Below are positions 13,921 through 62,728 of a stretch of DNA of 63,613 nt, in pieces. The position numbers and the translations under genes were made by a program. Below the pieces are notes generated by a model. That model was not told the DNA's origin, did not search any database, and worked only from the letters and a program-made list of their open reading frames with translations. This DNA is from Macrostomum lignano (taxonomy: Eukaryota), in assembly GCA_002269645.1 (NCBI GenBank), contig NIVC01004036.1, forward strand, positions 1 through 63,613. The letters run 5' to 3'. Numbering within the stretch: the first letter of the stretch is position 1; each line of letters starts with the position of its first letter.

Positions 13921-14460
13921 CGGGTGCTGGCGCCCCTGGTGCTGGCGCCCCTGGTGCTGGCGCCCCTGGTGCTGGCGCCCCTGGTGCTGGCGCCCCTGGT
14001 GCTGGCGCCCCTGGTGCTGGCGCCCCTGGTGCTGGCGCCCCTGGTGCTGGCGCCCCTGGTGCTGGCGCCCCTGGTGCTGGCGCCCCTGGTGCTGGCGCCC
14101 CTGGTGCTGGCGCCCCTGGTGCTGGCGCCCCTGGTGCTGGCGCCCCTGGTGCTGGCGCCCCTGGTGCTGGCGCCCCTGGTGCTGGCGCCCCTGGTGCTGG
14201 CGCCCCTGGTGCTGGCGCCCCTGGTGCTGGCGCCCCTGGTGCTGGCGCCCCTGGTGCTGGCGCCCCTGGTGCTGGCGCCCCTGGTGCTGGCGCCCCTGGT
14301 GCTGGCGCCCCTGGTGCTGGCGCCCCTGGTGCTGGCGCCCCTGGTGCTGGCGCCCCTGGTGCTGGCGCCCCTGGTGCTGGCGCCCCTGGTGCTGGCGCCC
14401 CTGGTGCTGGCGCCCCTGGTGCTGGCGCCCCTGGTGCTGGCGCCCCTGGTGCTGGCACCC
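13921..14460. repeat. Near-perfect GC-rich 15-bp array (ctggtgctggcgccc), 36 copies
   Basis: Four identical units per 60-nt line. Only the first and last units deviate. Confidence 0.98.
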
Positions 14461-14462
14461 CT

Positions 14463-14494
<32 letters not shown>

Positions 14495-14640
14495 GACTGA
14501 CTGACTGACTGACTGACTGACTGACTGACTGACTGACTGACTGACTGGCTGACTGACTGACTGGCTGACTGACTGACTGACTGGCTGACTGACTGACTGA
14601 CTGACTGACTGGCTGACTGACTGACTGGCTGGCTGACTGC
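14461..14640. repeat. (GACT)n microsatellite with GGCT variants
   Basis: Directly abuts the 15-bp array. Confidence 0.95.
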
Positions 14641-15659
14641 CCGAACCGCTACATTATTGGTGACATTTCCTATATGAGCAGTCTAAATACACTCGATTTG
14701 AGCCATGGAAAGTTTGTGTTGTAACTCTCAGGGCATCTGTGTCCCTATCTAAACTTCTTATCTGTTACAGATAATATTTGATATTAAAATTCAGTTAAAG
14801 CAAACACAAGTCTTTAAAGGTAAACACTTAGCAAGATAACAAGGGCCTGATACACCCTATAATACAATATTTGCTTCTGTAAATTGCTTAAAGTCACGAT
14901 TATATGCTTTGAATAAAATTTGTCTCAATTTTCACTATTGCTATGCTTCGTACGGCTGATTTCATTGAAAATTGGATAAAACTACTTTTAATATTGTTGC
15001 CTTAAGGAACTATTACACTACTTGCAAGTAAGTAGTGTAATACAGACTTTTGGTAATTTAAGAAAAAATAGGAAATAATTTGTTCTGAACTTATGAACGG
15101 TGGTACTGAAAAATTATTTTGAATATTTCGAAAACATTAGTTACGAGTTCTTCCTCCTTCAAAATCAGTTTGGGAAGCCTTTAAAATCCGGTAAGGAAGC
15201 CTTCAAAATTAGGTTGGGAAGCCTTCAGGATCAGGTGGAGAAATTACCCGGAGAAAAACCTGAACTCACCAAACGGCTCAAGCCAGCCCAGTCCGCAGCG
15301 ATCGTTGTCAGTTCTGGCGCCGGCGCTAGGAGAGCGCCAGAAGCGGAAAAACGCGGCCGGTCCGCCGTCCAGACGGGCGAGCCAGCCTAGGGCGAGAGGC
15401 GGCGACTGAGCGGCCAGGAACTGCTCGGCCGCCTGCGTTTGGAACAGCGGCCGGTTTGTTAAATTCGATTTTTAATTGCTTTACAGTGAAACTTCAATTG
15501 TCAGTTATTAAACCTGTCGAACTCTACTTACAGTAGATTGACAAGAAAAGAAGCTTAAAGTAATCGCTCTCTTGACAAATTACCCTGCGCAGTGCGCTAT
15601 ATGGAAGTATTTTAAGAACAGAAGCATTGAACACTAGAAAAAAAGAAAAAGGGAAAAGG

Positions 15660-16290
<631 letters not shown>

Positions 16291-17110
16291 CAGACAGGCT
16301 GGCAGATGGCCTAGAATGAAAGGGGAGAAAGAAAGACACAAAATCGGATAGGTCTGCCAGCCAGCGCCAGATGAACATGTAACACAGAAGACAGGCACAG
16401 CTCAGAGAGTTCCTGGGCATGAAAAGCGCAGTAGAGCGGGAGACCGCAGAGCTCAATGTTGCGGAGAAGGAAGGCCAGACAGACAGGCATATATCCAATC
16501 CAATCAGATAGCATCGATCGTGACGCAAGAGTCTGTCCCTGCACGGGATTAGTAAAGCAGACAGCCGGAATCTCAGGCCTGAGAGCCTAAACAAACCGGA
16601 GCTGCGGCGCCCGTAACACACAGCTCTTAAACTGCTGCTGAGCTAACAATAGAGTGAACAGAAACATCTGAGCATGAATAGCTACGGAGGTTAAATGAGT
16701 TCATCGTCGTAGCGGAGTTTAATAAACAGATTGGGGTATATTTGATGGAATATACATGAATATGAAACCTGACTAATAAATTAACCCATTTAGGTACACG
16801 CTTCCTTTTAGAATACTAATCTGCAGGCATTAGAACAAACGAACCATATGCTTGCGCAGTAATGCGATTCCTGGAAAGGCTGCAGCAGACACTTTAGAAT
16901 AAAGAGGAAGAAAGTGCGCAGTTGAAAGCTCTCTCCTAGCTGCAGTCTAAAGCCGCGGCCTATATTGAACTCGGTCGGAACTAGCTAGCTAAAAGGGATA
17001 AAAAGGGACAGGGCCACGAGGAGAAGTAAAGGCAGGAGAGGTTAAGCATAGCAAGTCATCAAGACACGGCAGTTAGGGTCTGGGGGAGTCACTATAGTGG
17101 GGCGCTTTCA

Positions 17111-19036
17111 CTTCACAAGACCTAAACTTCACAAGACCTAACCTTCACAAGACCTAACCTTCACAAGACCTAACCTTCACAAGACCTAACCTTCACAAGA
17201 CCTAACCTTCACAAGAGCTAAACTTCACAAGATCTAAACTTCACAAGAGCTAAACTTCACAAGAGCTAAACTTCACAAGAGCTAAACTTCACAAGATCTA
17301 AAATTCACAAGACCTAAACTTCACAAGACCTAAACTTCACAAGACCTAACCTTCACAAGACCTAAACTTCACGAGATCTAAACTTCACAAGAGCTAAAAT
17401 TCACAAGATCTAAAATTCACAAGACCTAAAATTCACAAGAGCTAAACTTCACAAGAGCTAAACTTCACAAGATCTAAAATTCACAAGACCTAAACTTCAC
17501 AAGACCTAACCTTCACAAGACCTAACCTTCACAAGACCTAACCTTCATAAGACCTAAACTTCACGAGATCTAAACTTCACAAGAGCTAAACTTCACAAGA
17601 TCTAAAATTCACAAGACCTAAACTTCACAAGAGCTAAACTTCACAAGATCTAAAATTCACAAGACCTAAACTTCACAAGACCTAACCTTCACAAGACCTA
17701 ACCTTCACAAGACCTAACCTTCACAAGACCTAATCTTCATAAGACCTAAACTTCACGAGATCTAAACTTCACAAGAGCTAAACTTCACAAGATCTAAAAT
17801 TCACAAGACCTAAAATTCACAAGAGCTAAACTTCACAAGAGCTAAACTTCACAAGATCTAAAATTCACAAGACCTAAACTTCACAAGACCTAACCTTCAC
17901 AAGACCTAACCTTCATAAGACCTAAACTTCACGAGATCTAAACTTCACAAGAGCTAAACTTCACAAGATCTAAAATTCACAAGACCTAAACTTCACAAGA
18001 GCTAAACTTCACAAGATCTAAAATTCACAAGACCTAAACTTCACAAGACCTAACCTTCACAAGACCTAACCTTCATAAGACCTAAACTTCACGAGATCTA
18101 AACTTCACAAGAGCTAAACTTCACAAGATCTAAAATTCACAAGACCTAAACTTCACAAGAGCTAAACTTCACAAGAGCTAAAATTCACAAGACCTAAACT
18201 TCACAAGACCTAACCTTCACAAGACCTAACCTTCACAAGACCTAACCTTCACAAGACCTAATCTTCATAAGACCTAAACTTCACGAGATCTAAACTTCAC
18301 AAGAGCTAAACTTCACAAGATCTAAAATTCACAAGACCTAAAATTCACAAGAGCTAAACTTCACAAGAGCTAAACTTCACAAGATCTAAAATTCACAAGA
18401 CCTAAACTTCACAAGACCTAACCTTCACAAGACCTAACCTTCATAAGACCTAAACTTCACGAGATCTAAACTTCACAAGAGCTAAACTTCACAAGATCTA
18501 AAATTCACAAGACCTAAACTTCACAAGAGCTAAACTTCACAAGATCTAAAATTCACAAGACCTAAACTTCACAAGACCTAACCTTCACAAGACCTAACCT
18601 TCACAAGACCTAACCTTCACAAGACCTAATCTTCATAAGACCTAAACTTCACGAGATCTAAACTTCACAAGAGCTAAACTTCACAAGATCTAAAATTCAC
18701 AAGACCTAAAATTCACAAGAGCTAAACTTCACAAGAGCTAAACTTCACAAGATCTAAAATTCACAAGACCTAAACTTCACAAGACCTAACCTTCACAAGA
18801 CCTAACCTTTATAAGACCTAAACTTCACGAGATCTAAACTTCACAAGAGCTAAACTTCACAAGATCTAAAATTCACAAGACCTAAACTTCACAAGATCTA
18901 ACCTTCACAAGACCTAACCTTCATAAGACCTAAACTTCACGAGATCTAAACTTCACAAGAGCTAAACTTCACAAGATCTAAAATTCACAAGACCTAAACT
19001 TCACAAGACCTAAACTTCACAAGACCTAAACTTCAC
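17111..19036. repeat. 16-bp satellite (cttcacaagacctaaa), about 120 copies, with higher-order structure
   Basis: The cacgagatct marker recurs at spacings that are all multiples of 16. Confidence 0.97.
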
Positions 19037-19529
19037 AGAATCTAAACTCGACATCATCTAAAATAATATTTTCATTTTTAATATGTTTTTGCCGTTAACG
19101 AAGGTTAAGACCTTCATTAACGATGCCCAACACTTGGTGAAGTTCGGGTCTAGTTTTGGGGAGAGCTCCCCAATTCAGCAATGTTAAGCTGCAATATTGC
19201 ATACATATACATTAAGCTAAAGTTGGAACCGGCAGGACATCACCTGGATGTATCCGCATCTGGCTGCCGGAAATTGGCAGCCCCGCGCTAGGGGAATGGG
19301 GACAACGACAGAATGGTAGTCTTTTGCATGGGAAGCTGCCGATATGGATCATGATAATTACGATGATAAATTGAAAGAATTTCCTTGCATGGACTTGTTC
19401 AACTAGGAATTTTTACCGGCGTGTATGGATAGATAGCGACTTTTTGGCACCAGCTTTAAAGAAAGGACCACTCTGTCAATGCTGCCTGCTGGCCAATCTG
19501 CTTGTCTGTCTAGCTGCACTAAGACAGAC

Positions 19530-22680: not shown

Positions 22681-25600
22681 CATCAGAATAAACACCAAAG
22701 TAGTACTATATAGATAATGAGGCATTTTGCCTTAAAAAGACACTTATAGTTATTCCTGCCATTTACCCAAGTTGCATTAATTTTGCTTTAGGGTTTCTTT
22801 TATATGTAAGTCCCATTTTTGGCCAAAAACTATGTTGCATTTTTTGTTAAAACTAAATTGCATGGCCGACCAAATTTTGGAGATAGAAAATGGAAATAGG
22901 CCCTACTAAATAATAAAATTTGACTATAATTAAAATAAAATAGTATATTGCATTACCTTTCATTCATAGTGTTTTTTATAAATAAAATAATATATAGACC
23001 TACTACATATACAACTACAACTATATTAATGTCAATGAACTCAAAAAAGTTCTAAATCCAATCTTAAATCCAAAGATTATATATATAAATAGAATAAATA
23101 AACAAATTGATTAGGCTACAAATTTTAATTTAGATCAAATTGATTACATTACACTACTAGGGTTTACACAAAAGTCAAAAGTGAATTTTTAAACTGACAA
23201 TGAAACATTGTAGCCACAAAAATCCTTTTTGGCACTATTATATCTTTTTTTCTAGGGGTAGGCATCCCTTTTGGGTTAGAAATTGGTATAATTCATGGCT
23301 CATGGGCAGTGTATATGACTCAGTCTGGCCCTCTGTATCCGGCTACCTGTGCTGTCAGTCAGTGACAGGATGTGGATGCTAGGGTTGGATAGTTAGAAGC
23401 AATGCCATAGACCTAGACCTTGCAGTAAATGCAATGGAACAGCAATATGACAGCAATATTATCAGCAACAAAATATAATGTCAGATACGTCTATTACTAA
23501 TGCAATTTCAAAAAAACGAATTATTACTTTTTACAGCCAAATAAATTTCAACCTACCTCCTGTTTGAAGCCATCCAGCAAAACCCAAAGACAATCGATCC
23601 ATTTTACCAAAGAATTAATATTAAATGCAGCCAAAAAAGAATTAAACCTAAATAAATAGATATAAATCAGCTGTGATGACTACGAACTGTTCAGGCCATG
23701 TATACGCCTGCGCATGTACTGGTACAGAAATGACTAGATTAGCTAAGTTTGCCTCAGCTGTACCGTAGAGTCGTAGGCTGAATTCTGTTCGACTATCGTT
23801 TCCCCTAAAATCAAATTTTAAACTAATACCTTTTTATTTGCACAAAAATAAGTTATAACAATAGAAAATCACGTGAAAGTTATAAATATATTCTTTAGAT
23901 TGTTGCTAAAAATACGGCAAATTGAGCCTTCTAAATTAGGTTTTATTTACCGGAATGCGTACAGTTACACAGATAAACACTGAAAAGTTACCAATTTGAT
24001 TAACATTTACGCGATAGGCGATATTTAAAAGTGACTATTTATAGCCTATCCTGAACTGGAATAGTACTACAACTTCCCACTACTGACTCTTGTCTAGTGA
24101 TATAAAAATTAAGCCTTAAAGTCCCATGTCTTACTCTTAAAACTTGATATTTGGTAGGGGCCTAAATCTCATTTTCCTTCCTTGGACCTTGGTTGTAAAA
24201 GATATGTTACTCTTGAAATTGGTCTTTAAGGAATAATAAGTTTTAAAGAATGTATTTTGAATTTGTAAAACTTAGGTCTGTATCATTAAATGCCATTTAG
24301 TCTTAGATAAAATATGAATAATCATATTCATAAATCATATTCAGCCAAAAAATTGTTTTACAAATATTTTTTTAAGTTTGTATTTAACCAATGTTTATAG
24401 GTGTACCCTATAATAGGCCTAATTAGAATTACTAAGACCTTTAGGATTAGTTAAAGGATTTTTCCTGCTTATAAAAATCATTAAAATGCATGGCATAGCT
24501 TGACTCTTTGGTTTTATGGATCTATTTTATCTTTCATACATATATTAATTCATTGCTAGCTAAGAATGATTAAAATATATTTATAAAACCAATGAGCCAA
24601 GTCATGCTATTTTAATAATTCTTGGGCATAGACATATACAGTTATAAATAAAATGAAAACTAACAGAAAATCCTAATTTTCTCAATTAAAAACTTTATAA
24701 ATAATATTATAGGGCTAAAAGAAAGGCACAACATATCAAAAGATAAAGATTAGGTTGGTCTCTTATTGAAAGCAATAATAATGATATTAAAAAAGTAAAA
24801 AAGTTCCTATTTTCATATTGTATTTTTTGGCAAAAAGTTTCCTTCAAAATTCTTTGAATGAAACATAAGTATTGCATCCTATATATATATATATATCTTC
24901 TAAAATTATACTGTTTGGATGACTTAGTTTTGATTACAAATGTAGGTTTAGAGATTTTAGATGTTAGATCTTATATACTAAAAATGAATTGTTTGTCTCT
25001 ATTTATGTGATTGTAGTTTTCTAAAAGTTTCTAGCATGTATTTGATTTTCTGCAAAGTATCAAATAATTATATATTCAAAAGCATAAAAAATATATTTTA
25101 TATATATTTATATATTTTAAAGCATAAAAATATAGTCAAAAGTCTATATTAGCATATAGAAATTTATGTAGAATATACTAGAAATTATAAAATTAACTGC
25201 TAAGATACCAAATCTGGCCTTAAATTTAAGCTATTGCTTAATTTTTTCTTCAATTTTTTTTTAATTAGGCATATACTGTATGCTTTTATCCTACTACCAG
25301 TAGTTTAAGCTTAGGAAATGTTAATAGTATGATAAACCAAGATTTTAGGAGTTTTTCTACTAGTATAAAGCAGTTGAAGCCTAGTGAAAAATATTTTTTA
25401 TCTTGGAACTAAGACTAATACATGTTAGTCTTAGATCAAATGAAAAAATTGGAGAAAAGAAGAGGTCTAGAAGACAGTTGTTAGTTTGACTTAGAAAATA
25501 TATAACAACCAAAAAGGATAATTAAGACTAAGGGGATTGAGAATACATAGAACTGCTATAGGTTGTCATAGCAAGTAACAATGTACAATGACAGTTAATG

Positions 25601-29139: not shown

Positions 29140-30579
<1,440 letters not shown>

Positions 30580-33314: not shown

Positions 33315-34828
33315 TCAGCTGACACAGCTAGACTGACACAGCTCCACTGACACAGCCAGACTGACACAGCCAGACTGACACAGCCAGACTGACACAGCCA
33401 GACTGACACAGCCAGACTGACACAGCCAGACTGACACAGCCAGACTGACACAGCCAGACTGACACAGCCAGACTGACACAGCCAGACTGACACAGCCAGA
33501 CTGACACAGCCAGACTGACACAGCCAGACTGACACAGCCAGACTGACACAGCCAGACTGACACAGCCAGACTGACACAGCCAGACTGACACAGCCAGACT
33601 GACACAGCCAGACTGACACAGCCAGACTGACACAGCCAGACTGACACAGCCAGACTGACACAGCCAGACTGACACAGCCAGACTGACACAGCCAGACTGA
33701 CACAGCCAGACTGACACAGCCAGACTGACACAGCCAGACTGACACAGCCAGACTGACACAGCCAGACTGACACAGCCAGACTGACACAGCCAGACTGACA
33801 CAGCCAGACTGACACAGCCAGACTGACACAGCCAGACTGACACAGCCAGACTGACACAGCCAGACTGACACAGCCAGACTGACACAGCCAGACTGACACA
33901 GCCAGACTGACACAGCCAGACTGACACAGCCAGACTGACACAGCCAGACTGACACAGCCAGACTGACACAGCCAGACTGACACAGCCAGACTGACACAGC
34001 CAGACTGACACAGCCAGACTGACACAGCCAGACTGACACAGCCAGACTGACACAGCCAGACTGACACAGCCAGACTGACACAGCCAGACTGACACAGCCA
34101 GACTGACACAGCCAGACTGACACAGCCAGACTGACACAGCCAGACTGACACAGCCAGACTGACACAGCCAGACTGACACAGCCAGACTGACACAGCCAGA
34201 CTGACACAGCCAGACTGACACAGCCAGACTGACACAGCCAGACTGACACAGCCAGACTGACACAGCCAGACTGACACAGCCAGACTGACACAGCCAGACT
34301 GACACAGCCAGATTGACACAAGCCAGACTGACACGGCCTGACTGACATAGCCAGACTGACACAGCCAGACTGACACAGCCAGACTGATACAGCCAGATTG
34401 ACACAGCCAGACTGACACGGCCAGACTGACACAGCCAGACTGACACAGCCAGACTGACACAGCCAGACTGACACAGCCAGACTGACACAGCCAGAGCCAG
34501 ACTGACACAGCCAGACTGACACAGCCAGACTGACACAGCCAGACTGACACAGCCAGAGCCAGACTGACACAGCCAGACTGACACAGCCAGACTGACACAG
34601 CCAGACTGACACAGCCAGATTGACACAGCCAGACTGACACGGCCAGACTGACATAGCCAGACTGACACAGCCAGACTGACACAGCCAGACTGACACAGCC
34701 AGACTGACACAGCCAGACTGACACAGCCAGAGCCAGACTGACACAGCCAGACTGACACAGCCAGACTGACACAGCCAGACTGACACAGCCAGATTGACAC
34801 AGCCAGACTGACACGGCCAGACTGACAT
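33315..34828. repeat. 14-bp array (gactgacacagcca), about 108 copies
   Basis: Perfect for about 950 nt, then variant blocks. It explains the three 490-531 aa SVWLCQ ORFs. Confidence 0.98.
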
Positions 34829-36097
34829 ACTGTAAAATAAAATCTGGGCTTACTATTTTAAAGATGTACGCAGAAAAAAATCTAAAAGCAAAGAAAATGA
34901 AAGAAAGCATTTTTTGGCTAAGCGTGAGAAAATATTGTCAAGCAATAAATGAAGATGAATTAATTGAACTGAATGCTGAAAATTAATTAGTCAACACACG
35001 GAACAATTTAGCAATCAGAAATAATTGGAACAGACATATAGCTACAATAGTAGTAGAATGCCAATTTTTTTCTTTAGAGAAATTGAAAAATTAATACTGG
35101 CTAGTTTATTGACGTTGGATTGGGCGCAGATACGCTGGCAAGATGTGGCTTTACACACACTATTATTAAACGCAAAGTCCTAATTGATTGTACATTTCAA
35201 ACTAACTCACTGGCCAACAATAGGCCTGTTTCTAGGCCTGCTTGCTTATGCTTAGGTTGACAGGGCAAATAAAAATTGGAAAGTGGAAGGCTAAGTAACC
35301 GGCCCGCGTGTTGTTTGCTTTGCTGAGTGAATTGAATGTCCAAGTTGGGGTTTGTGGGTGTACAGTCAGTGTACAGTCATCTCTAGCTGTATTACCCTAG
35401 CCTTGCTTCGTGTGCACTGGCTCCAATGTACACTCGGGTCCGCGTCCGGCCCATCCCTCTTTCCCTCTCTCTATGAGTGCGTACATGTACAATGCAGGGG
35501 CAGAGGGTTTTTAGTCCAAACCGGGCAGAAGACGCAAGCAAGCTGGCAAGCTCCCAGCCTTAACTTACATAAAAATAGAGAGCCAATACTTTTATATTCC
35601 CAGAAAGCTCTCCGCGTGTGAAAGCGAGACAGGGGAGTTGCTCGGGCGAGGAAATACGATAAACACAAGTCAATTCTGTGCTAAATTTGGTAAGCCTTTT
35701 TGTCATTTTCTGTTGCATTGCTTTTGTTTTCACTTTTCACCTATATTAATCATTATAATATACAGCTTAGTCCCGAGATTATTTATCGGGATAAACCTTG
35801 GGGCTTAACCAAGATCTTATATAGGCCCATTTCAAGTGGCTTATTTCGATTCAAGCTTGTGAAATTTTTGAGCTTGTGAAGTTTCGAGCTGTCTAACTTT
35901 GCTTAAGAAAAGCTGTATGTATGATTTCATAGCTATATATTATACTTATCTGTTAGTGTGCATGTTTATGCTCAAGTATGTAAAGGTATCATGATACCTA
36001 TAATTACGAGTATCGAATTCTTTGCAGAACCCGCCGTTACTAATTAATTAAAGAATTCAATCAATTGTAAACCAATTGACACAAAAAAGTTGTCAGA

Positions 36098-37228
36098 ATG
36101 CGACTCCACATGTCCCGCTTGTTGGCGGCCAGTTTCCTGCTAACAATGCTATGCTTTGTCTGGCTATTCAACACACTGCACCGCCCGTCCGATTCGTCTG
36201 TTGTCAATGGCGAAAAGCTTGTAGTTGCCAAAGCAATCGAACGCATCGTACGCCGAACCTTTGTTAGCCTTGCCCCGTCGCCTGCTGTAAACAGACTCGC
36301 GGCGGCGCCAACAAAGACCATAATCAAAACAAAGACTGAGGATAGTAGTCGCAGTTCGGCGCCAGTCAGCTCGAATCGAATACCGTATATTTTGCACCAG
36401 ACTTGGATCACGGACACCATACCGGCCACCTATGTGCCATTCGTCAAGAGCTGGCTGCCGCACAATCCTCCGTTGGATTATTATTACTGGACCGATGCCA
36501 AATCCGTGCAATTCGTTGCCAAGCACTATCCCCACCTGCTGGCCATGTTCAAAGGCTACAAGGCGCACTTGAACCGGGCCGACTCTATTCGCTACATGCT
36601 GCTGCATCACTATGGCGGAGTCTACGCTGACATGGACATGATGCGGCTGCGGGATCTCAGTCCGCTGCTGAACAGCACCCAGGAGCTGTGCTACCTTAGC
36701 CAGGAGCGCTATGAGATCACCAGACTTTACTGGGGCCTCAACAGCAGCGTCATGAACGCCATCATGCTGAGCTCGCCCGGCCATCAGTTCATGGAATTCG
36801 TGGTGAACTCGCTGCCAAAGTACGCGCATCATTCGCCAAACGTGATGGAGTCTACTGGGCCATTCTTTCTGCAAAATGTCTATAACGAATTCGTCAGGTC
36901 GCCGCCATGCCGCCTGTCCGAGCCTCGCTGCCGCTGCGCCGTGGCCGACCCGTACCTGTTCATGCCGCAAATTGATCCAATTCGAATACCGAATTTCCGC
37001 GCCAAATGCAGCAGCCGGGGCGGCTTGGCTAGCAACGCCCGCGAGGCCTGCTCGATGCTGGATAAAATCAATTGGCAAAATGATATTCAAGTGATTGGCA
37101 AGAATTCTTATACGCATCACGGATTTCTGCATTACGGATTCGAGAATCAGAGGCTGAAATTCTCTTCCGAAGCTGATATTGGTAGCGTACGACAGGGCAA
37201 GAAGATCTTTGGCGTTGATTTTTATTAG
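36098..37228 (+). CDS. Type II membrane glycosyltransferase, GT32 / DXD sugar-binding family (SUR1/CSH1/OCH1-like), 376 aa
   Basis: N-terminal hydrophobic helix LLAASFLLTMLCFVWLF and S/T/P-rich stem, then IPYILHQTW, RADSIRYMLLHHYGGVYADMD (DXD), NAIMLSSPGH and ESTGPFFL. Confidence 0.88.
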   Translation: MRLHMSRLLAASFLLTMLCFVWLFNTLHRPSDSSVVNGEKLVVAKAIERIVRRTFVSLAPSPAVNRLAAAPTKTIIKTKTEDSSRSSAPVSSNRIPYILHQTWITDTIPATYVPFVKSWLPHNPPLDYYYWTDAKSVQFVAKHYPHLLAMFKGYKAHLNRADSIRYMLLHHYGGVYADMDMMRLRDLSPLLNSTQELCYLSQERYEITRLYWGLNSSVMNAIMLSSPGHQFMEFVVNSLPKYAHHSPNVMESTGPFFLQNVYNEFVRSPPCRLSEPRCRCAVADPYLFMPQIDPIRIPNFRAKCSSRGGLASNAREACSMLDKINWQNDIQVIGKNSYTHHGFLHYGFENQRLKFSSEADIGSVRQGKKIFGVDFY

Positions 37229-41050: not shown

Positions 41051-41409
41051 CAAACTCTGAATTCACCTTAACCCCGAACCCGGTACCCCTTACCCTAAAC
41101 CCCGAACTGGGTACCAAAGCCCGACCCGACCCCAACCTAACCCCGAACTTTCTGACACTGAATTGTCAGAATGCCTCTCGGCAGGCAGACATAAAATGCG
41201 CGACAAACCAACGAAAAAAACACCAAACTTTATTCTGCTTTTCCCATACAAGCAGCTCTCCTATTCGCTGCGATACAGTCAGACACATCATACACTTGCC
41301 GGCCTGGCTGACCCAGGAAGCCAGGAGAGAAAAAAATTATTTATAAATTGCATCCTTACTTAATTACGATTGAAACATGCAGTTCAAACCACGTACTAAA
41401 AAATAACAA

Positions 41410-42115
41410 AACCAACAACAAAGAACTCCTCCCACCGACCACACGAAGTGGGCAGAAGGGGGGAGTCAGATAGCACGCCGATGTGTTAGGTCGCTCAAAA
41501 AGTCACACAGGCCCGCCTGGTCAGGGGCGCTATCATTTTTTTCAGTTGATCCGTTTATTTTTCCAAAGTACGGATAAACATTGAGTTTCCTGAGTCGGTA
41601 TAGCGTCCATTAACAGTCTGTGAATGTAGCGAGCCGTTGGGCGCCTTCGGCCGTCGGGGAAAGCAGCGCGAGGTCATTCGCGTAGCCGAGCACGCAGAGC
41701 CGCTTCTCCGGGTGCCGCCGACTTGTCCGTCTTCCCAGCAGGAAGTCGTCGTCCGAGTTGGGCAGTCCGGTCCTTAGCACCCAGTCTAGTGCCAGCACGA
41801 ACAAAAGGGCGACAGAATGTCCCCTTGCAACACTCCTGAAGACTTGCTGAACTGGTCCGACAGGCCGTCATCACCGCAGCCGTCGTGTCCTGGTACGTCG
41901 CCATGATGGCACATTGTAGGCTCGGAGCACGAGAGGCAGCGCGCCACCGAGGGGAAAGCCTTGGAAGTCAACGAAGTCGACAACAAGGCTTGACTGCCTC
42001 CTCGATGATACGGCGGAGGGCGAGAATCTGCGTCACTGCACCACATTGCGGCCGGAACCCATTCTGGTTGGGGCGCAGAAACGGGTCCAGCACAGGCTGC
42101 AACCGCGCAAACAGA
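41410..42115 (-). mobile_element. Degenerate, internally deleted RTE-like LINE fragment
   Basis: RLQPVLDPFLRPNQNGFR, VTQILALRRIIEEA and LGYANDLALL. The 3' end cgtgctatctga and a ttgttg tail near 41410-41490 match the copy at 48433. Confidence 0.8.
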
Positions 42116-42569
42116 ATCCGGAGAGAGAGAGAGAGAATTAAGTCTATAGTGTCTAAGCGCACGAATACCCACTTTCAAACTGCAAGTGTGGGAATAGAAT
42201 TTAGTGAACACTTACAATAACGATCGAGGTCTCTAGAAAGGGCGTCTTCTTCTAGAAGTAACGGAATCGGAGTCTTTTGCCCAGCTATTTGTTACTCTTG
42301 GGTACCCAAAAGCTATTAAAATCAATAATCGTATAAGAGTATCGGAATCGGTCCAGTGGATACTATCAAATCCCTTAGGAACAGGGAGGCCTCAATTTCA
42401 ATAACTCATAAAAATTAACCTGATCAATAACGGCCGGTAACGACTCAGCTCTCAATAATCAAATAACGATTAAGGCTTCAACAAAGGTTTACCAATTGGT
42501 ATTCGTTTCCCTCAGAGATGTAGCCTCTTTCCGGAGGTTGTACTGGATAGGTCTCAATTCAAGCTCTTC

Positions 42570-43130
42570 TGAGGCTGCTTTGAGGCTCAGCCCGGCTGGA
42601 TCCGTACTTGCGTTCTGAGCAGAACGGCTTCCGGCCGTTCGCGGCACAGTGACGCAAATCCTAGCTCTTCGCCGAGTCATCAAGGAAGCGCGGATACGCC
42701 AGTCGATCATGATTGTTATCTTCATAGATTTCAAGAAGGCATTCGACTCGCTCGTCAGGTCTGTGGTCCCAAATTAGGTGCTCCAGGCGTACAACGTGCC
42801 AGAGCAGTTGATTTCCGCCATCCTGGCGATGTACCGGTATACGAAAGCTGCTGTTTCAGCACCGGACGGCCCATCGGACCTCTTTGTGACATCCTCCGGG
42901 GTGCTTCAGGGAGATACGCTTGCGCCGTTCCTGTTCGTTCTGGTGATTGACTGGGGTGCTGCGGATCGCTCTTCCTACCAACGATGACGGCTTTCTGTTG
43001 CGGCGACGCGTGGGTCGACGTCAACCGGAGAGGCGGCTCAGCGTGCTTGGCTACGCCGACGATCTCGCCCTGCTGCTGTCCTCAACTGTCGAGGTCAATC
43101 GAGTACGCCCAGCGACAACTGGACAAGCAA
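42570..43130 (+). mobile_element. RTE-like LINE reverse transcriptase fragment
   Basis: TVTQILALRRVIKEA, FIDFKKAFDS, SGVLQGDTLAPFLF and LGYADDLALL, with stops and frameshifts. Confidence 0.9.
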
Positions 43131-43499
43131 GAATTGCTGTTGCGGCGAGTCCTGTAACAGAGCTAAGTTGCTCTGCTACAGTCCTTGATTGTATCAAACT
43201 TCTTAATATGTTTCATGGGCTCTACCATCAAAATTAACCTTATTAACCTAACCCTTGCAAAAGTTGGCGCCTCCGGCTCCTCTCGGGCCCGAACCCATCT
43301 GTCCCGATTCCCAGCAGCTGAGTCATCGACTCGCGCATCAAGGCGTGGATCAGGACCCAGCACCGCTCAACTAGGGCGAACTGCACTACCTGCAGGCAAT
43401 CCAGATGCGCTGTCCCTCAACGCTCATCGATCAGCTCCGGAAACGATCCTCGATCTTGCGCCTATCGAGAAGATCAGGCATCCGGGCTGTCACCATGTC

Positions 43500-48432: not shown

Positions 48433-50058
48433 ACAACAACAACAATAGAGTACGCTGTCAGTTCGCAAAAGCAGCGTCAGATGGCACGCTTCAAAGCTTG
48501 GGCACAAACAAAGGCCGCACTGCCGGCAGAGTCCGGGGCGCCGGCATCAGCCAGCAGACAGTCGATGTAGCGCCGAGTCCTCGCCTGTCCCCGCCGGTAG
48601 GGTGCCTGCAACGTAAGTAGCAGCACCTCCTGCACTGGCTCCAGACAGTAGGCCTCGGCGTGGATGACGTGGCCTGCCAGCTGGAGTCGCCGACGGCGCA
48701 GCAGATCGCTAGGACGGGCCAGGCCGGCGCGATGATAGAGCGCCGTGTTGGTGACTCGCTCGTTGCCGATCTTGAAGGCGGCGCGCAGCAGGCCAGCGTG
48801 CGCCACGTCGACTTGAGCCTCGAGCGAGTCTGTCAGCGTCCAGGTCTCGGCGTTGTATAACAGGACGGTCTCGATCACCGCCTGGAACAGCGCCGCCCTC
48901 TGGCGGTCCGGTAGGGCCTCAGACTGCAGGACTGACCTTATAGAACGAAAGGCAGCCCAGGCAAGTTCTCGGCAACGCCGCAGATCCTTGCGGAAGTCGG
49001 GAACCAGACCGCCGAGGTAGACGAACTGCTGACATCTTGGAAGCTCACTCGCCTGTCCGTCAGCGCCTCGGCAGAAGATTGCAGCCTCGGTGTCGTCCGG
49101 CACGCATAGCACGACGGTCTTCTGCATGTTGACCACCAGGCCGACGCTCGCCGCAACGGCAACCAGCCTATCCAGCTGTCGTTGGGCGCCCTCGACGGTC
49201 GAGGACAGCAGGGCGAGGTCATCGGCGTAGCCAAGCACGCTGAGCCGTCTCTCCGGTTGGCGTCGACCCACGCGTCGCCGCAGCAGGAAGCCGTCGTCGT
49301 TGGAAGGCAGAGCAGTCCGTAGCACCCAGTCAAGCACCAGAATAAATAGGAACGGCGCTAGCGTATCTCCCTGGAGCACCCCGGAGGATGTCTCGAAGAA
49401 ATCCGATAGGCCGTCCGGTGTTGAGACAGCAGCCGTCGTGCCGTGGTACAGCGCCATGACAGCAGAAATCAGCAGCTCTGGCACGTTGTACGCACGGAGC
49501 ACCTCTGGGAGCGCGTCCCTCACGACCGAGTCGAAGGCCTTCCTGAAATCGACGAAGATCAGGATCAGGGTCAACTGGCGGATGCGCGCCTCCTCGATGA
49601 CTCGCCGAAGCGCCAGGATCTGCGTCACTGTGCCGCGATGGGGCCGGAATCCGTTCTGCTCAGGCCGCAGGTACGGGTCCAGTACAGGCTGTAATAGAGA
49701 TGGCCCGAAATTGATTTTTGCTGCCACCCGAAACCCGAAATCGCGGTTACAGCCGCTGTAACCGCGATAGCAGCATGCGGTTGAACAGCTTCGCGGCGCA
49801 GGACTGTAGGCAGATGCCTCGATGCTCCTCGAGCTTGGTGGTGCCCGGCTTCTTTGGAATGGCGACGATGTGCGCCGTGGTCCATTCGTTTGGCGCCACC
49901 TCACCGGAAAGCACGCGGTTCATCACTCTGGCGACCTCAGTGGCCACGAAGTGGATCCGCAGCGCCTCGGTGGGCACCTCGTCCGGACCAAGCGCTTTGC
50001 CGCCCAGCGACTGCCGAGCGAACTTCACAACGTCGGCTGTGCTGACTGGGGCAACGTT
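48433..50058 (-). mobile_element. 5'-truncated RTE-like LINE (reverse transcriptase and C-terminal region), interrupted at 49695-49761
   Basis: GKALGPDEV, AIPKKPG, EQNGFR, FVDFRKAFDSV, GVLQGDTLAP, YADD, FVYLGG and LLYNAETW, with an intact frame to RAI-stop, a short 3' UTR and a (TTG)n tail. Confidence 0.95.
49687..49768. mobile_element. hAT-like terminal remnant with palindromic footprint inside the LINE
   Basis: ggctgtaa | TAGAGATGGCCCGAAA...cccgaaacccgaa | atcgcggttacagc-c-gctgtaaccgcgat. Confidence 0.65.
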
Positions 50059-50894
50059 GTAACACCTTATTAAATATTAATAAATATAGGTAAAAACAAA
50101 TATATGTTTTAAAGATTTCATCTAAGATATAGGTGTAGGTGATACTAAATGTGGTAAAATCAAGTGTGTACCAAAGTGATTTAACAAGTGAGTAACTTAA
50201 CGAAATATTTCAGGTCCAAGTAGGGCTCTAGCAATGACATGGATAACCTTATGTTGGAGCTTTTTGTGGATGCTATAGTTTGTGGATAATAATAAAAATA
50301 ATTAATATAATAAAGTAGGGTATATTTCATAAAGAATAATAAAAATGAAAACATTTTCAATTAATCAACTTTATAAATAAAGAAATATAAACTTTTAAAT
50401 AATAACCACTCAATGCTCCATGTATATTTGATACCAAAGTAACCTGTAACTAAAACATATATTGGTCATACATGCACAACTTCCAAAATTCAGTCGGCTA
50501 TGCAACTTGCTTAGTTTATATATAGTATCATCTTAAATAAAATGTACATATGAATATGATTATAAATATAATAGAAAAAAACAATTGACTAAAACAATTT
50601 ATTGGTTAGTATTTAAGTTTCTTTCTAGTTGTTAAAATAAAATTAGATTATATTGCTTTTCTATTAATACTATGCTTTTATAGGTCAGAAAGACTTGGAA
50701 GTAAGAGGGATTAGGGTATAGATATCTTTATTTTGAACTTTTGGACTAATGCCAATTGGTATCTTTGGTTTTCCAATTTGATATCCTGATTTAAGCCTAG
50801 GATATACGAGCGTATAACATATTCTGAAAATATTAAGTCTATACTTTAGTATTTCATAAGCTAACCAAACCAACAATCTTAATTTCAGTCTAGA

Positions 50895-53800
50895 ATGGCA
50901 GTCCATCCACCGAATTGCGATGATGTTACCAGCACATACAAGCTGGTTGTTGTTGGCAATGGCGGTGTTGGCAAGAGTGCACTAACTATACAATTCTTTC
51001 AGAAGATGTTTGTGCAAGACTATGATCCAACTATTGAAGACTCGTATATTCAGTACAAGATGATTGACAGTGATTGGTGTCTGTTAGACGTTTTGGACAC
51101 TGCAGGTTAGTTTTTTTTTATCCTGCTGATTATGTCTGCACATATTTTTGTTTTTTGACCCAATTTTCACCTAGGAATAGCGGTTCTTGCCAGCTTCCCA
51201 GGTTTCCTCAGTCTGAGCCAGCAGCTTCCCAGGTTTCCTCAGTCTGAGCCAGCAGCTTCCCAGGTTTCCTCAGTCTGAGCCAGCAGCTTCCCAGATTTCC
51301 TCAGTCTGAGCCAGCAGCTTCCCAGGTTTCCTCAGTCTGAGCCAGCAGCTTCCCAGATTTCCTCAGTCTGAGCCAGCAGCTTCCCAGATTTCCTCAGTCT
51401 GAGCCAGCAGCTTCCCAGATTTCCTCAGTCTGAGCCAGCAGCTTCCCAGGTTTCCTCAGTCTGAGCCAGCAGCTTCCCAGATTTCCTCAGTCTGAGCCAG
51501 CAGCTTCCCAGGTTTCCTCAGTCTGAGCCAGCAGCTTCCCAGATTTCCTCAGTCTGAGCCAGCAGCTTCCCAGGTTTCCTCAGTCTGAGCCAGCAGCTTC
51601 CCAGATTTCCTCAGTCTGAGCCAGCAGCTTCCCAGGTTTCCTCAGTCTGAGCCAGCAGCTTCCCAGATTTCCTCAGTCTGAGCCAGCAGCTTCCCAGATT
51701 TCCTCAGTCTGAGCCAGCAGCTTCCCAGATTTCCTCAGTCTGAGCCAGCAGCTTCCCAGGTTTCCTCAGTCTGAGCCAGCAGCTTCCCAGATTTCCTCAG
51801 TCTGAGCCAGCAGCTTCCCAGGTTTCCTCAGTCTGAGCCAGCAGCTTCCCAGGTTTCCTCAGTCTGAGCCAGCAGCTTCCCAGATTTCCTCAGTCTGAGC
51901 CAGCAGCTTCCCAGGTTTCCTCAGTCTGAGCCAGCAGCTTCCCAGGTTTCCTCAGTCTGAGCCAGCAGGCAGCAGCTCAATAGAGTTTCCAAACCCCTTC
52001 CAGGCCAGGAAGAGTTCTCCGCAATGCGCGAGCAGTACATGCGGAAAGGCGACGGCTTCCTGCTAGTCTATTCGGTCACCGATCGAAAAAGTTTCGATGA
52101 TATTCGACACTTTCACACTCAAATTCTTCGAGTAAAAGACCGGGATAATTATCCCATGGTGCTGGTGGCCAATAAAGTGGACCTCGTGCATCTGCGCCGC
52201 GTTAATGAAGAGGAGGGCAAAAACCTTGCCAATCAGCTTAAGGTGAGTTCAAATGTATATAGAGATGCTATGTCTTATCTTTACTCTCTTTAGAGTGTGG
52301 GATCTTATCCCAATCCTACTGGAAAGTGTGGGATCTAATTGTACTCCTGTTATAGTGTGGGGTCTTAGTACTAACAAGCAGTACATAATCTGGCTAGGCT
52401 GTTTCGTATTTCAGCTGCATTGTGCTGCGGTTGCCAATGACTAATTTATAACAAGGGCGTGTCGCCCTGTCTAAACTATACTCGTAAATACTGCATTCCT
52501 TTCACTATCGCATAGTTTTGTTTCCACGGCAACGGAGGGGACACAATGGTAAATGAAATGTAGAAAGACTGTATACTGCACCTCAGCACTCATATTTTTT
52601 ATTCGCCTGGCAAACTGCGACTCGCATTGTTTGCTGCGGGCCTGGAGATCCAGGGAGAGCACTGGCGGATGGAGCCGGAGCGAAGGCATTCTATTTCTGT
52701 CAGCCATCCGTTTGCCAAACATGCAGCTTGAAATGCAGGCCTGCGCAAATCGGCATGTAATCTGGACCTTTGCACTGTCTGTTGCTAAAAATAGTTCGCC
52801 ACTTACCTTCTGCCTCTCGCACGCTTGGTACGAGCGTGTAGAAAAGTATGCTATGAACCAGCGAGTGAGAGAGAGCTAGACTGCTAGGCCCAGGTCTTTC
52901 GCCCTCTCCCCCATCCCCCCACCTCGTGACTGGCCTGGGCTGTCATTAGTTCCACGTGTTCACGTGACTTGGAACCCTTGAAGAGCTGGGACCGCTGAGA
53001 TGCCTGGACTAGAAAGCAGATTAAGACTTTGCAGATGGAAATTTGAACACTGATTTGATCTTTTTTAGTAGGACTTTTCTCTGACTGATTGCTTAAATTT
53101 GTACTGATATCAATATGGAAGGATTTTATTTCATGGAACCATTGCCGATCGAATGTGTTGAGAAAAATAAATAACTTATAAAAGATGAATAAGAAACAGC
53201 GATTATCAAATTTGGAAGTTATGCCATATTGTGTTAGAAGCTGTTCTGAAACTAAAGATGAGAGAGGAGGGGGATGAGATCATAGATGGATGAAAGGAGC
53301 GAGGAGATAAGAGGGAAGAGGAGAGATAGGAGAGAAGAGGGGAGAGAGGAGAAGAGGGAAGAGATGAGATGACAGGAAAGAAGGGAGAGAGATGAGAGGA
53401 GAGAAGAGAGGAGAGATGAGATGAGAGATGAGATGACAGGAAAGAAGAGGCGAGGGATTAGAGGATGAGAGGAGATGAGAGAAAGGGTGAGAGGGGGGAA
53501 AGATGAGAGGCGAGAAGAGACGAGAGAGGAGAGGAGAGAAGAGAAGAGGGGAGAGCTGAGAGGAGAGAAGAGGGGAGAGCTGAGAGGAGAGAAGAGGGGA
53601 GAGCTGAGAGGAGAGAAGAGGGGAGAGCTGAGAAGAGAGAAGAGGGGAGAGATGAGAGGAGAGAAGAGGGGAGAGAAGAGGGGAGAGCTGAGAAGAGAGA
53701 AGAGGGGAGAGCTGAGAGGAGAGAAGAGGGGAGAGCTGAGAGGAGAGAAGAGGGGAGAGCTGAGAGGAGAGAAGAGAAGAGAGAAGAGGGGAGAGCTGAG

Positions 53801-60774: not shown

Positions 60775-62728
60775 ATGCGAGTGTTCATCTGCCACGAGAA
60801 CGGGCGAAGCTCACTGGACCTGCCCGAGGGCAAGACGGTGGCGGACATCAAGCAGATTATCAAAGGTAAGACGACAATACACGATCCGAATGTCTACATT
60901 TAAAATGAGTGAGACTTTCACTATACAGCTAAGTAAGATACAACAAAGTGACATGCTGTGCGCGCTAAATTAGAAGAAAGGTAATCTTCACAGCCCCGAT
61001 CAAATGCAATCACTGATTGTGTGATGAGAAAAAATGATTTGTGATATCTACGAAGTGTATTTTTCCAGGAAATTGGCCTCCAAAAAATTACACTATCCTT
61101 GTGTTTTACGTCCTGTTATACTACACTGGTCCTGGATTTGGGGTCTTGATTTGGTTCAGGACGGGATTATCCAGTTTTTTGAGGGGTTTCGCAAATTTTC
61201 TGAATTTTTCCGTAGAATTACGAAGCACAATTCGTTAGAATTTTGTAATTTCGTTTTGTTACGTAATTAAGCTCCGTTATGCGGCTCTCTCCGCTCTCAC
61301 AAAACCAGCAATACATTGCAAATAATTTGAAAATGCCATTCAATTTATTTTTTCACAATGAGAGTAACTAGTGTAGGGATGCAATTCGTTTGCAAATATT
61401 TTTTTTCAAAATAGGTGATTAAGCATTCTGAGCATATTCTGTGCTGTGAAACAGATTAAATCCCCGCTCTAAGCGATACAGATATAGGGTCACGACTTAA
61501 AGGTCGGGGGTTCGATTCACGACCCACTCAGAACAATTTGTGTCCTTAAGCAAGACACTTAACTCTGAATTGCTTCAATTCACCCGGCTGTAAAATGGGT
61601 GCCAGCATTAGCTGGGGTAATTGAGCCCCAGTCCTTCGCAGCCTTCAGATGTGCCGAGCAATAGCTGCGGCTGAGCTGTCGGTTGCACAACTGGCCCAAT
61701 TGGGGCAGGTGTAATCAATTAAAAATGTGATAAAAAGTGCAAAAACCTCCACGAAAAGCTCAGCTTCCTCCCCTCATCTCCGCGGTACTAGATCGCTTCA
61801 AGATCCGGGTTGACCAAGTCCAGCTCGGCGACATCAACTTCGAGCGCAACACTCTGGTGCTGTCCTACGCCGGCGCCGAGCTGGACGACCGCTGGATCCT
61901 CTCCGACATGGGCATCCGGCCCGGCGCCACTCTGCGCGCCTACGTCAAGGAGGAGACCGACCCCGTGCTGTACCTGCGAGTCGGCTACAGCGAGGAGCTC
62001 ATGCCCATACTGGACCGCATCAAACTGCTCAACTACACCGTGGCCTCCCTTCGCGGCATGGCCTCAAGGCGCACCGGCCTGCCCGTGGGAGTGTTCCGCC
62101 TGACCACCTCGTCCGGAGCGGAGATGTACGACTGCCACACCATGGAGGACTACTCGGTGCGGCCCGGGACACCATCCGCGTGGAGACCTGGGACGGCTGG
62201 ACCGACCTGCTCAAACTGGCGTCGCTGGGTTTCACAAGCCACGTGCTGGAGCTCGTGAATCGAACCGACGATGCTCTGGCCAAATTCCAAATGAAGGTTG
62301 CTCTGTACATGGCGGCCCATTTTGGCCAGGTCGAGCTGAGCACCACCCTCACCAGGCAGTGCGGCATCCGATGCGACGAAGCTGTTGGCGCTCACCCGCT
62401 CAAGCAGTGGTGCTCGGCTGAGCGGCACCCCGACTTGAAGAAGTCACCGATCCACGAGGCGGTGGAGAGCGGCCAGCTGTCAGTGCTGCGCGGCTTCGTC
62501 CATCACAACGTCTGCTCCATCATGGTGCGCGACGGCGCCGGTCTGCAGCCGCTGAATCTGGCGCTGCGTCAGAAGCAAAAGTCATGCGCCAGCTTCCTGC
62601 TAACTAAACAGTGGAGCCGCATACCCTACAGCAACAGCACCGTGCCGCTGGCCATCTTTGCTAGGATGAAGAACTGGTCTGACAAGGCCAAGGACAAGGT
62701 CTCCGTACTGCAGGGACAGGACAAGTGA
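60775..62728 (+). CDS. ANKUB1: ANKUB1 orthologue (tandem ubiquitin-like domains plus ankyrin repeats); exon 60775-60865 and exon from 61792 to about 62724; 1-nt frameshift at 62166-62168; 3' end uncertain
   Basis: MRVFI...IK|DRF, LSYAGAELDDRWILSDMGI, GLPVGVFRL...GAEMYDCHT, ETWDGW, KVALYMAAHFG, EAVGAHPLKQWC and PIHEAVESGQL follow human ANKUB1 in order. Splice phase matches (G|gtaaga ... tactag|AT). Confidence 0.88.
61480..61725 (+). mobile_element. tRNA-derived SINE in ANKUB1 intron 1
   Basis: B-box GGTTCGATTC at 61509-61518, then gtgtccttaagcaagacacttaact and gtaaaatgggtgcc, which resemble conserved central SINE domains. A-rich end. Confidence 0.55.

What the first reader, a model, noticed from the sequence alone, without database searches (positions are those of the whole stretch)
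49687..49768. Apparent fossil of a hAT/RAG-type hairpin excision intermediate
The LINE reads LSRLQPVL except for 67 extra nt. On the + strand these follow the target ggctgtaa and comprise 45 nt starting TAGAGATGG with three CCCGAA repeats (hAT-like end), then atcgcggttacagcc, then gctgtaa rejoining the LINE. The 15-mer is the exact reverse complement of the expected right flank ggctgtaaccgcgat, and the flank itself lacks its first G. hAT transposases are known to nick 1 nt into the flank and seal it as a hairpin. Opening that hairpin about 15 nt off-centre and joining it to a broken left end would give exactly this pattern, with an unusually long P-nucleotide tract.
Basis: partly seen in the sequence, partly recalled or inferred. 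Interest (0 to 1): 0.7.

Follow-up and report, generated by a model that had tools for sequence, protein, structure and literature searches.

The report
Scar of a hAT transposon excision
A dead LINE copy in the flatworm Macrostomum lignano carries a 67-nt scar that matches the known footprint of a hAT-type cut-and-paste transposon, so it is a clear natural example of a known mechanism and not a new one.

Summary
The window is the whole contig NIVC01004036.1 of Macrostomum lignano. A 5'-truncated LINE (RT, minus strand) is interrupted by 67 nt:
- GGCTGTAA
- a 45-nt stretch starting TAGAGATGG, with three CCCGAAA repeats
- ATCGCGGTTACAGCC
- GCTGTAA, which rejoins the LINE.

Intact relatives read straight through this position.

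The last 29 nt form a perfect odd palindrome, 14 + C + 14. It is centred on the complement of the first base of the right copy of an 8-bp target duplication. Published Ac/Ds footprints show this same signature.

I enumerated hairpin models. Only an 8-bp duplication with a 1-nt strand offset (hAT geometry), opened 13-15 nt from the tip, rebuilds the sequence. A blunt RAG/Transib-type hairpin never does.

The 45-mer has no local template. I could not show that it is a transposon end elsewhere, because no second copy, allele or read set was reachable. The hAT assignment therefore rests on geometry, the 8-bp duplication, a TAGAG terminus and the subterminal repeats.

Verdict: probably a fossil of an incomplete hAT excision. 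It is a new instance of a known kind and of modest interest.

The parts
48477..50060 (-). Host sequence: a 5'-truncated non-LTR retrotransposon (LINE) copy with a reverse-transcriptase ORF, about 0.8 kb upstream of the M-Ras-like gene BOX15_Mlig017889g2.
   Evidence: Pfam RVT_1, E=4.5e-23. Closest named relatives are M. lignano RT proteins. The GC-rich block ends at about 50060.
49687..49694 (+). Left copy of the 8-bp target-site duplication, GGCTGTAA. It is intact and abuts TAGAG.
   Evidence: Relatives carry this octamer once.
49695..49739 (+). 45-nt stub, the putative left end of a hAT-type element. It starts TAGAGATGG and is unique in the window.
   Evidence: No match longer than 10 nt elsewhere in the window, so no local template.
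49704..49740 (+). Three CCCGAAA repeats (49704-10, 49727-33, 49734-40). They look like subterminal repeats. The last A, or AT, is shared with the P tract, giving 1-2 nt of junction ambiguity or microhomology.
   Evidence: 3 of the 4 CCGAAA occurrences on the + strand of the window are here. CCCGAAAT occurs at 49704 and at 49734.
49740..49754 (+). P-nucleotide tract of 13-15 nt, the inverted copy of the right flank. The central C at 49754 is the complement of the first base (G) of the right duplication copy.
   Evidence: Exact reverse complement of GGCTGTAACCGCGAT. Reproduced by the hairpin simulation.
49755..49761 (+). Remaining 7 nt of the right copy of the target-site duplication, GCTGTAA. 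The LINE resumes at 49762.
   Evidence: Direct repeat D6, spacing 67..
49740..49768 (.). Perfect odd palindrome, 14 + 1 + 14 nt. This is the sequence record of the opened flank hairpin.
   Evidence: (I1). Longest tight palindrome in the window and above all 30 simulations.

Best explanation
A hAT-superfamily DNA transposon, probably a short non-autonomous copy, inserted into this dead LINE and made the 8-bp duplication GGCTGTAA. Later the transposase cut its right end in the standard hAT way. It nicked the non-transferred strand 1 nt into the flank, and the freed 3'-OH attacked the other strand at the element boundary. This sealed the right flank as a hairpin with the first G of the duplication at its tip.

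A host nuclease opened that hairpin on the 3' side, 13-15 nt from the tip. Unfolding gave a long 3' tail whose complement is the P tract ATCGCGGTTACAGC-C.

This end was joined to a DNA end that retained only the first 45-47 nt of the element's left end, probably through 1-2 nt of microhomology (A or AT). That stub could have arisen in two ways:
(a) the left end was never cut and the element was resected from its cut right end; or
(b) after full excision, the left flank copied 45-47 nt from a sister or homologous copy and synthesis aborted before end joining.

What is shown: the sequence anatomy, the empty site in relatives, and the fact that only 8-bp-duplication plus 1-nt-offset hairpin geometry reproduces the sequence.

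What is inferred: that the 45-mer is a hAT end, the side and distance of hairpin opening, and the choice between (a) and (b).
For: - Anatomy and empty site.
- Simulation: canonical hAT geometry opened 15 nt from the tip on the 3' side rebuilds 49740-49800 exactly.
- Enumeration over duplication lengths 2-12, strand offsets 0-2, both opening sides: the only solutions are an 8-bp duplication with a 1-nt offset, or a contrived 9-bp duplication with offsets 1 and 2. There are no blunt-hairpin solutions.
- Literature on the first cut: Hermes and RAG nick the non-transferred strand first and hairpin the flank (PMC6900584).
[quoted passage not shown] Assigning the overhang to Hermes and the blunt end to Transib is my reading plus my own knowledge of Zhou 2004.
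- Literature on footprints: Ac/Ds footprints are palindromic P insertions centred on the complement of the base next to the element, with arms up to 20 nt in yeast (PMC5873905).
- Terminus: TAGAG fits the hAT end consensus YARNG, and TAGAGATG differs at one base from the Ac TAGGGATG and Tam3 TAAAGATG ends (my own knowledge).
- Repeats: three CCCGAAA repeats within 37 nt resemble hAT subterminal repeats (PMC10368747).
- No template for the 45-mer in the 63.6-kb window.
- One-ended hAT remnants are known, for example fractured Ac (PMC1592236).
- DNA transposons are polymorphic between M. lignano homeologous contigs.
Against: - The 45-mer was not found anywhere else. It is unique in the window and absent from 17.9 kb of contig NIVC01003821.1. 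JGI metagenome contigs gave no match to the 19-mer and only chance matches to the 20-mer; prokaryote genome contigs gave only chance matches; viral contigs gave none. No paper prints this terminus.
- No hAT transposase and no matching right end were seen.
- The octamer GGCTGTAA fits only half of the weak hAT target consensus nTnnnnAn: A at position 7 but G at position 2.
- The same sequence would also arise from the opposite offset polarity with 5'-side opening, so the polarity of the cut is not proven.
- This is a single locus in a single assembly, and no read support was checked.
Confidence: 0.68

Rival explanations
1. Repair of a break that no transposon made, by polymerase-theta-type end joining. 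The inverted 15-mer and the 7-nt direct repeat would be templated from the flank, and the 45 nt copied or captured from elsewhere.
For: The inverted 15-mer and the direct 7-mer are copies of adjacent sequence. The 45-mer could not be tied to any transposon family.
Against: - Snap-back priming needs a loop of several nucleotides. Here the centre is a single base, which points to a covalently sealed tip (inference from established hairpin geometry).
- The inverted copy spans the whole sequence GGCTGTAA|CCGCGAT, so it needs an already duplicated octamer or an intact template.
- No template of 11 nt or more for the 45-mer exists anywhere in the window, whereas such templated inserts are usually local and short.
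- It needs three separate coincidences: an 8-nt stagger, a zero-loop inversion, and a TAGAG start right at the duplication.
Confidence: 0.1
2. The same kind of scar, left by a different superfamily that also hairpins the flank, for example a Mutator-like element with 8-9-bp duplications.
For: Muta1 makes flank hairpins and 8- or 9-bp duplications (PMC5499845). The enumeration also allows a 9-bp duplication with offsets 1 and 2.
Against: - The terminus TAGAG and short subterminal hexamer or heptamer repeats are typical of hAT. The Muta1 end is GGGTCTACCC within a 145-bp TIR.
- More than 90% of Muta1 excisions were precise, and its footprint pattern differs from that of hAT.
- The odd palindrome centred on the complement of the adjacent base is documented for hAT.
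Confidence: 0.07
3. Assembly or sequencing artefact: a chimeric or mis-polished stretch in the PacBio-based Mlig_3_7 contig.
For: There is only one assembly copy of this locus. The homeologous contig NIVC01003821.1 stops at the equivalent of window position 35843 and does not reach it. No reads were available.
Against: Known long-read artefacts give read-scale fold-backs. They do not give a 15-nt inverted piece placed exactly at an 8-bp duplication next to a 45-nt foreign stretch. The surrounding LINE is otherwise colinear with relatives.
Confidence: 0.05
4. Error made by the LINE's own reverse transcriptase (template switching or self-priming) during retrotransposition.
For: Reverse transcriptases can switch templates and self-prime. 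The insert lies inside a LINE.
Against: First-strand cDNA runs left to right on the + strand. When the inverted 15-mer would have been made, its template CCGCGAT had not yet been synthesised on that strand (inference). The model explains neither the octamer duplication nor the single-base centre.
Confidence: 0.02

Closest known systems
Ac/Ds (hAT) excision footprints in plants, S. cerevisiae and Candida albicans (Coen hairpin model; Huefner 2011 and Lazarow 2012, as summarised in PMC5873905)
   Same: An 8-bp duplication is retained. There is a palindromic P-nucleotide insertion centred on the complement of the base next to the element. The arm length of 14 nt is within the reported range of up to 20 nt. 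Short microhomology is possible at the joint.
   Different: Only one side shows the hairpin signature. The other side keeps an intact duplication copy plus 45 nt of the element, so the excision was one-ended or its repair was aborted. It is a natural germ-line fossil in a flatworm, not an experimental revertant.
Hermes transposase mechanism (Zhou et al. 2004; Hickman et al. 2014, 2018)
   Same: The geometry needed to rebuild the sequence: first nick on the non-transferred strand 1 nt into the flank, then a hairpin on the flank.
   Different: No transposase, right end or second copy was seen here. The cut polarity cannot be separated from its mirror image using this sequence alone.
Fractured Ac (fAc) and other terminally deleted hAT remnants in maize
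   Same: A hAT element reduced to one terminus that stays at the original insertion site.
   Different: fAc keeps about 2 kb and stays transposition-competent when paired with another end. This remnant is a 45-nt stub fused directly to a hairpin-derived palindrome.
V(D)J coding joints with P nucleotides (RAG); Transib
   Same: A flank hairpin opened off-centre gives palindromic additions.
   Different: RAG and Transib hairpins are blunt, so the palindrome is even. Their duplication is 5 bp and the end is CACAGTG-like. None of these features fits here.

Membership tests
hAT superfamily transposon (scar of) | 8-bp target-site duplication | tested here: met
   GGCTGTAA is on the left. On the right are GCTGTAA plus a central C, the complement of the eighth base. 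Relatives carry the octamer once. Enumeration excludes duplication lengths 2-7 and 10-12.
hAT superfamily transposon (scar of) | Excision through a flank hairpin with a 1-nt offset, leaving an odd palindrome centred on the complement of the adjacent base | tested here: met
   The 14 + C + 14 palindrome at 49740-49768 is reproduced only by 1-nt-offset models. The signature is described in PMC5873905, and a one-nucleotide 5' overhang on the excised element in PMC8151067.
hAT superfamily transposon (scar of) | Terminus fitting YARNG, with short subterminal repeats | tested here: met
   TAGAG is at 49695 and there are three CCCGAAA repeats within 37 nt. The consensus itself is from my own knowledge, and only one end is available.
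hAT superfamily transposon (scar of) | Matching terminal inverted repeat at the other end | not testable with these tools
   The right end is gone from this locus, and no other copy was found.
hAT superfamily transposon (scar of) | Family of copies in the genome, with autonomous members encoding a BED/DDE/hAT-domain transposase | tested here: inconclusive
   There is no second copy in the window, in L010 or in the public collections I could scan. The M. lignano assembly itself could not be searched by DNA.
hAT superfamily transposon (scar of) | Target preference nTnnnnAn | tested here: inconclusive
   GGCTGTAA has A at position 7 but G at position 2. The consensus is weak.
RAG / Transib | Blunt flank hairpin (even palindrome), 5-bp duplication, CACAGTG-like end | tested here: not met
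   No blunt-hairpin model fits at any duplication length. The duplication is 8 bp and the end is TAGAGAT.
Polymerase-theta templated insertion | Inserted stretches copied from sequence near the break | tested here: not met
   The 15-mer has a local template, but the 45-mer has no match longer than 10 nt in the 63.6-kb window.
Mutator-like element | 8-11-bp duplication, long TIRs, flank hairpin | tested here: inconclusive
   The duplication length and the hairpin are compatible. The terminus does not resemble the one MULE end I checked (Muta1). The cut offset of MULEs was not found in the papers I read.

The most novel reading that the evidence does not exclude
The scar records how an animal germ line, or the stem-cell lineage of a regenerating flatworm, processes transposase-made hairpins. 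Opening happened 13-15 nt from the tip, far beyond the 1-4 nt typical of Artemis. The opened end was then joined to a stub produced by one-ended cleavage or aborted copying. If such long-P-tract, one-ended hAT scars are common across the M. lignano genome, they would give a genome-wide natural readout of hairpin opening and end joining in this animal. They would also suggest a non-Artemis (MRN/CtIP-like) route.
Probability: 0.12. Interest if true: 0.5.

Novelty: new member of a known kind. Interest (0 to 1): 0.3.

Why it matters
hAT excision through flank hairpins is known mainly from in-vitro work on Hermes and from experimental revertants of Ac/Ds, Tam3 and hobo. A natural, unselected scar that keeps the intact left junction, a piece of the element, and a 14-nt-arm palindrome with the diagnostic complemented centre base is a compact record of the whole reaction in a flatworm. 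If the family is found, it documents past hAT activity in M. lignano and shows how far from the tip hairpins can be opened there. It changes no concept. It is a single neutral locus inside a dead LINE.

Tried and rejected
**Looking for the 45-mer elsewhere**
- Window with up to 3 mismatches: unique.
- Window self-BLAST: unique.
- JGI metagenome contigs, two scans: 0 hits and 3 chance hits.
- Prokaryote genome contigs: 3 chance hits.
- Viral contigs: 0 hits.
- Literature search for the terminus string: only PCR primers.

**Looking for a second allele or homeolog of the locus**
- The M-Ras-like gene next to the LINE is on record only on this contig.
- Its paralogues P0121 and P0123 are not on record.
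- An exon-1 query found no M. lignano partial.
- The tubulin gene led to the homeologous contig NIVC01003821.1. That contig starts at the equivalent of window position 35843, about 14 kb short of the site.
- The 181-aa neighbouring gene is on this contig only.

**Other checks that led nowhere**
- Rfam scan of the region: nothing.
- A possible right end at 62649-62660 (CAAAGATGGCCA) lies in an ankyrin-like ORF with no further similarity. Rejected.
- A cluster of CCCGAA at 41073-41142 is an unrelated AACCCCGAAC repeat. Rejected.
- An apparent extension of the palindrome beyond 14 nt (8 of the next 15 positions, then 0 of 6) is chance (and reading).
- Several mechanism papers were not held: Zhou 2004, Hickman 2014 and 2018, Yu 2004. 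The 1-nt offset therefore rests on a review sentence plus my own knowledge.

Full report
**Where the window comes from**

The 150-aa translation of two exons at 50895-52240 is 100% identical to PAA48857.1, 'BOX15_Mlig017889g2' of Macrostomum lignano. That protein's only contig is 63,613 bp long, exactly the window length. Look-ups name the record as NIVC01004036.1 of GCA_002269645.1. The window is therefore a whole contig of the Mlig_3_7 assembly of this free-living flatworm. About 31% of it is minisatellite arrays.

**The observation**

...CAGTACA GGCTGTAA | TAGAGATGGCCCGAAATTGATTTTTGCTGCCACCCGAAACCCGAA | ATCGCGGTTACAGCC | GCTGTAA CCGCGATAGCAGC...

- The host is a 5'-truncated LINE on the minus strand (RVT_1, E=4.5e-23).
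- Its frame reads ...NRMLLSRLQ before the insert and PVLDPYLRPEQNGF after it.
- Twenty-three relatives, including M. lignano proteins P0009 and P0049, read (L/V)(Q/L)x(V/I)(L/I) straight through this position.
- A ~90% identical LINE on a metagenome contig (L001) is colinear across the site. Both window segments share the same TTACAGC, so the window has a 7-nt direct duplication plus 60 extra nt.
- A more distant LINE fragment in the window (42060-42121) is also uninterrupted.
- The 15-mer at 49740-49754 is the exact reverse complement of GGCTGTAACCGCGAT.
- Together with the next 14 nt it forms a perfect palindrome, 14 + C + 14. This is the longest tight palindrome in the window and longer than any in 30 Markov simulations.

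**What the palindrome says**

A palindrome with a single central base cannot be made by a 3' end folding back to prime on itself, because that needs a loop of several bases. It is what a covalently sealed hairpin leaves once it is nicked away from the tip and filled in.

I simulated a donor site with duplication GGCTGTAA and cut the right end in three ways.
- Canonical hAT geometry removes the last flank base from the strand that carries the flank 3'-OH and leaves the other strand full-length. Opened 15 nt from the tip on the 3' side, it gives exactly the window sequence from 49740 onward.
- The mirror-image offset with 5'-side opening gives the same sequence.
- A blunt RAG/Transib-type hairpin never does.

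A wider enumeration covered duplication lengths 2-12, offsets 0-2 on either strand, both opening sides and distances 1-30. Its only solutions are an 8-bp duplication with a 1-nt offset, or a contrived 9-bp duplication with 1 and 2 nt lost. Because the last repeat reads CCCGAAAT across the joint, as the first repeat does at 49704, the opening may have been 13, 14 or 15 nt from the tip, with 0-2 nt of microhomology.

**How this compares with the literature**

[quoted passage not shown] Assigning the overhang to Hermes and the blunt end to Transib is my reading plus my own knowledge of Zhou 2004.
[quoted passage not shown] Arms reach 20 nt in S. cerevisiae, and 47% of yeast footprints have arms of 3 nt or more (PMC5873905).

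The window palindrome is centred on C, the complement of the G that would have abutted the element. Its 14-nt arm is long but within the published range. The right half of the insert is therefore a textbook hAT footprint half. The RAG-type reading is excluded.

**The 45-mer**

It begins directly after an intact copy of the octamer. Its first bases, TAGAG, fit the hAT terminal consensus YARNG. TAGAGATG is one base away from the Ac TAGGGATG and Tam3 TAAAGATG ends (my own knowledge, not tested here). It contains three CCCGAAA repeats within 37 nt, while CCGAAA occurs only once more on that strand in 63.6 kb. Short subterminal repeats are a hallmark of hAT ends (PMC10368747). It has no match longer than 10 nt anywhere else in the window, so there is no local template of the kind polymerase-theta insertions use.

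I could not show that it is a transposon end elsewhere.
- The window holds no other copy.
- The 17.9 kb I could fetch from the homeologous contig holds none.
- Exact-match scans gave no hit for the 19-mer in metagenome contigs and none for the 18-mer in viral contigs.
- The 20-mer in metagenome contigs and the 18-mer in prokaryote genome contigs gave three hits each. All are chance matches, with 20-44% identity outside the pattern.

The M. lignano genome cannot be searched by DNA with these tools, and the protein-based routes to a second copy of the locus all ended short of the site.

**Most likely history**

A hAT element, perhaps a short non-autonomous one, inserted into the dead LINE. Its right end was later cleaved with hairpin formation on the flank. 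The hairpin was opened far from the tip on the 3' side and joined to an end carrying only the first 45-47 nt of the element.

Two routes give that stub, and the sequence cannot tell them apart:
- one-ended cleavage followed by resection of the element from its cut end; or
- full excision followed by copying from a sister or homologous copy that aborted after 45-47 nt, then end joining.

One-ended hAT remnants are known in maize as fractured Ac (PMC1592236). Transposon insertion polymorphism between M. lignano homeologous contigs is directly visible: a 3.8-kb element with 6-bp duplication CGATAG is present in NIVC01003821.1 and absent from the window.

**Rivals**

- A transposon-free break repaired by templated end joining needs an 8-nt stagger, a zero-loop inversion and a non-local 45-nt insert that happens to start with TAGAG at the duplication. 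I give it about 0.1.
- Another flank-hairpinning superfamily such as Mutator-like elements is possible, but the terminus and repeats look like hAT (about 0.07).
- An assembly artefact cannot be excluded without reads, but it has no known mechanism for this precise anatomy (about 0.05).
- A reverse-transcriptase error fails on strand logic (about 0.02).

**Verdict**

The hairpin interpretation is well supported by geometry, and the hAT part is favoured over the RAG part. The identity of the 45-mer as a transposon end remains untested. This is a new instance of a known kind of scar, not a new mechanism, and its interest is modest (0.3).

Noticed in passing
L010 (NIVC01003821.1) 12876-16714; empty site in window at 23793-23798: A 3.8-kb ORF-less insertion is present in the homeologous or allelic contig and absent from the window. 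It has terminal inverted repeats GGTCGTTCnCAAA and a 6-bp duplication CGATAG. This is a DNA-transposon insertion polymorphism between two copies of the same region (92-99.5% identical elsewhere).
   Followed up: partly
window 41635-42121 (LINE sense on -) and 42561-43149 (LINE sense on +): Two further fragments of the same LINE clade lie head to head about 440 bp apart. They are 68% and 80% identical to the host LINE and 63% to each other. Both begin within about 20-30 nt of the LINE position that carries the 67-nt insert and cover the same ~550-nt segment. This is either a coincidence, the limit of alignability, or a preferred truncation point.
   Followed up: partly
window, 24 arrays, e.g. 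3768-6113, 17110-19048, 33319-34827, 51191-51968: About 19.5 kb of the 63.6 kb (31%) is minisatellite arrays with units of 12-46 nt. One is a 31-mer array inside the first intron of the M-Ras-like gene.
   Followed up: no
window 36080-37225 (+): An unannotated 382-aa open frame matches the glycosyltransferase DXD sugar-binding region (Gly_transf_sug, E=1e-15). No gene is called there in the record.
   Followed up: no
window 29140-30579 (-) and NIVC01003821.1 6488-7930: An alpha-tubulin gene has its start codon on a separate mini-exon. An identical 451-aa product is encoded on two contigs, in line with the recent genome duplication of M. lignano.
   Followed up: partly
tool behaviour: A 73-aa query to the search for homologous proteins returned only short proteins (128 aa or less). 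It missed the 100%-identical P0121 and P0122 found, so short queries appear not to retrieve longer proteins.
   Followed up: no
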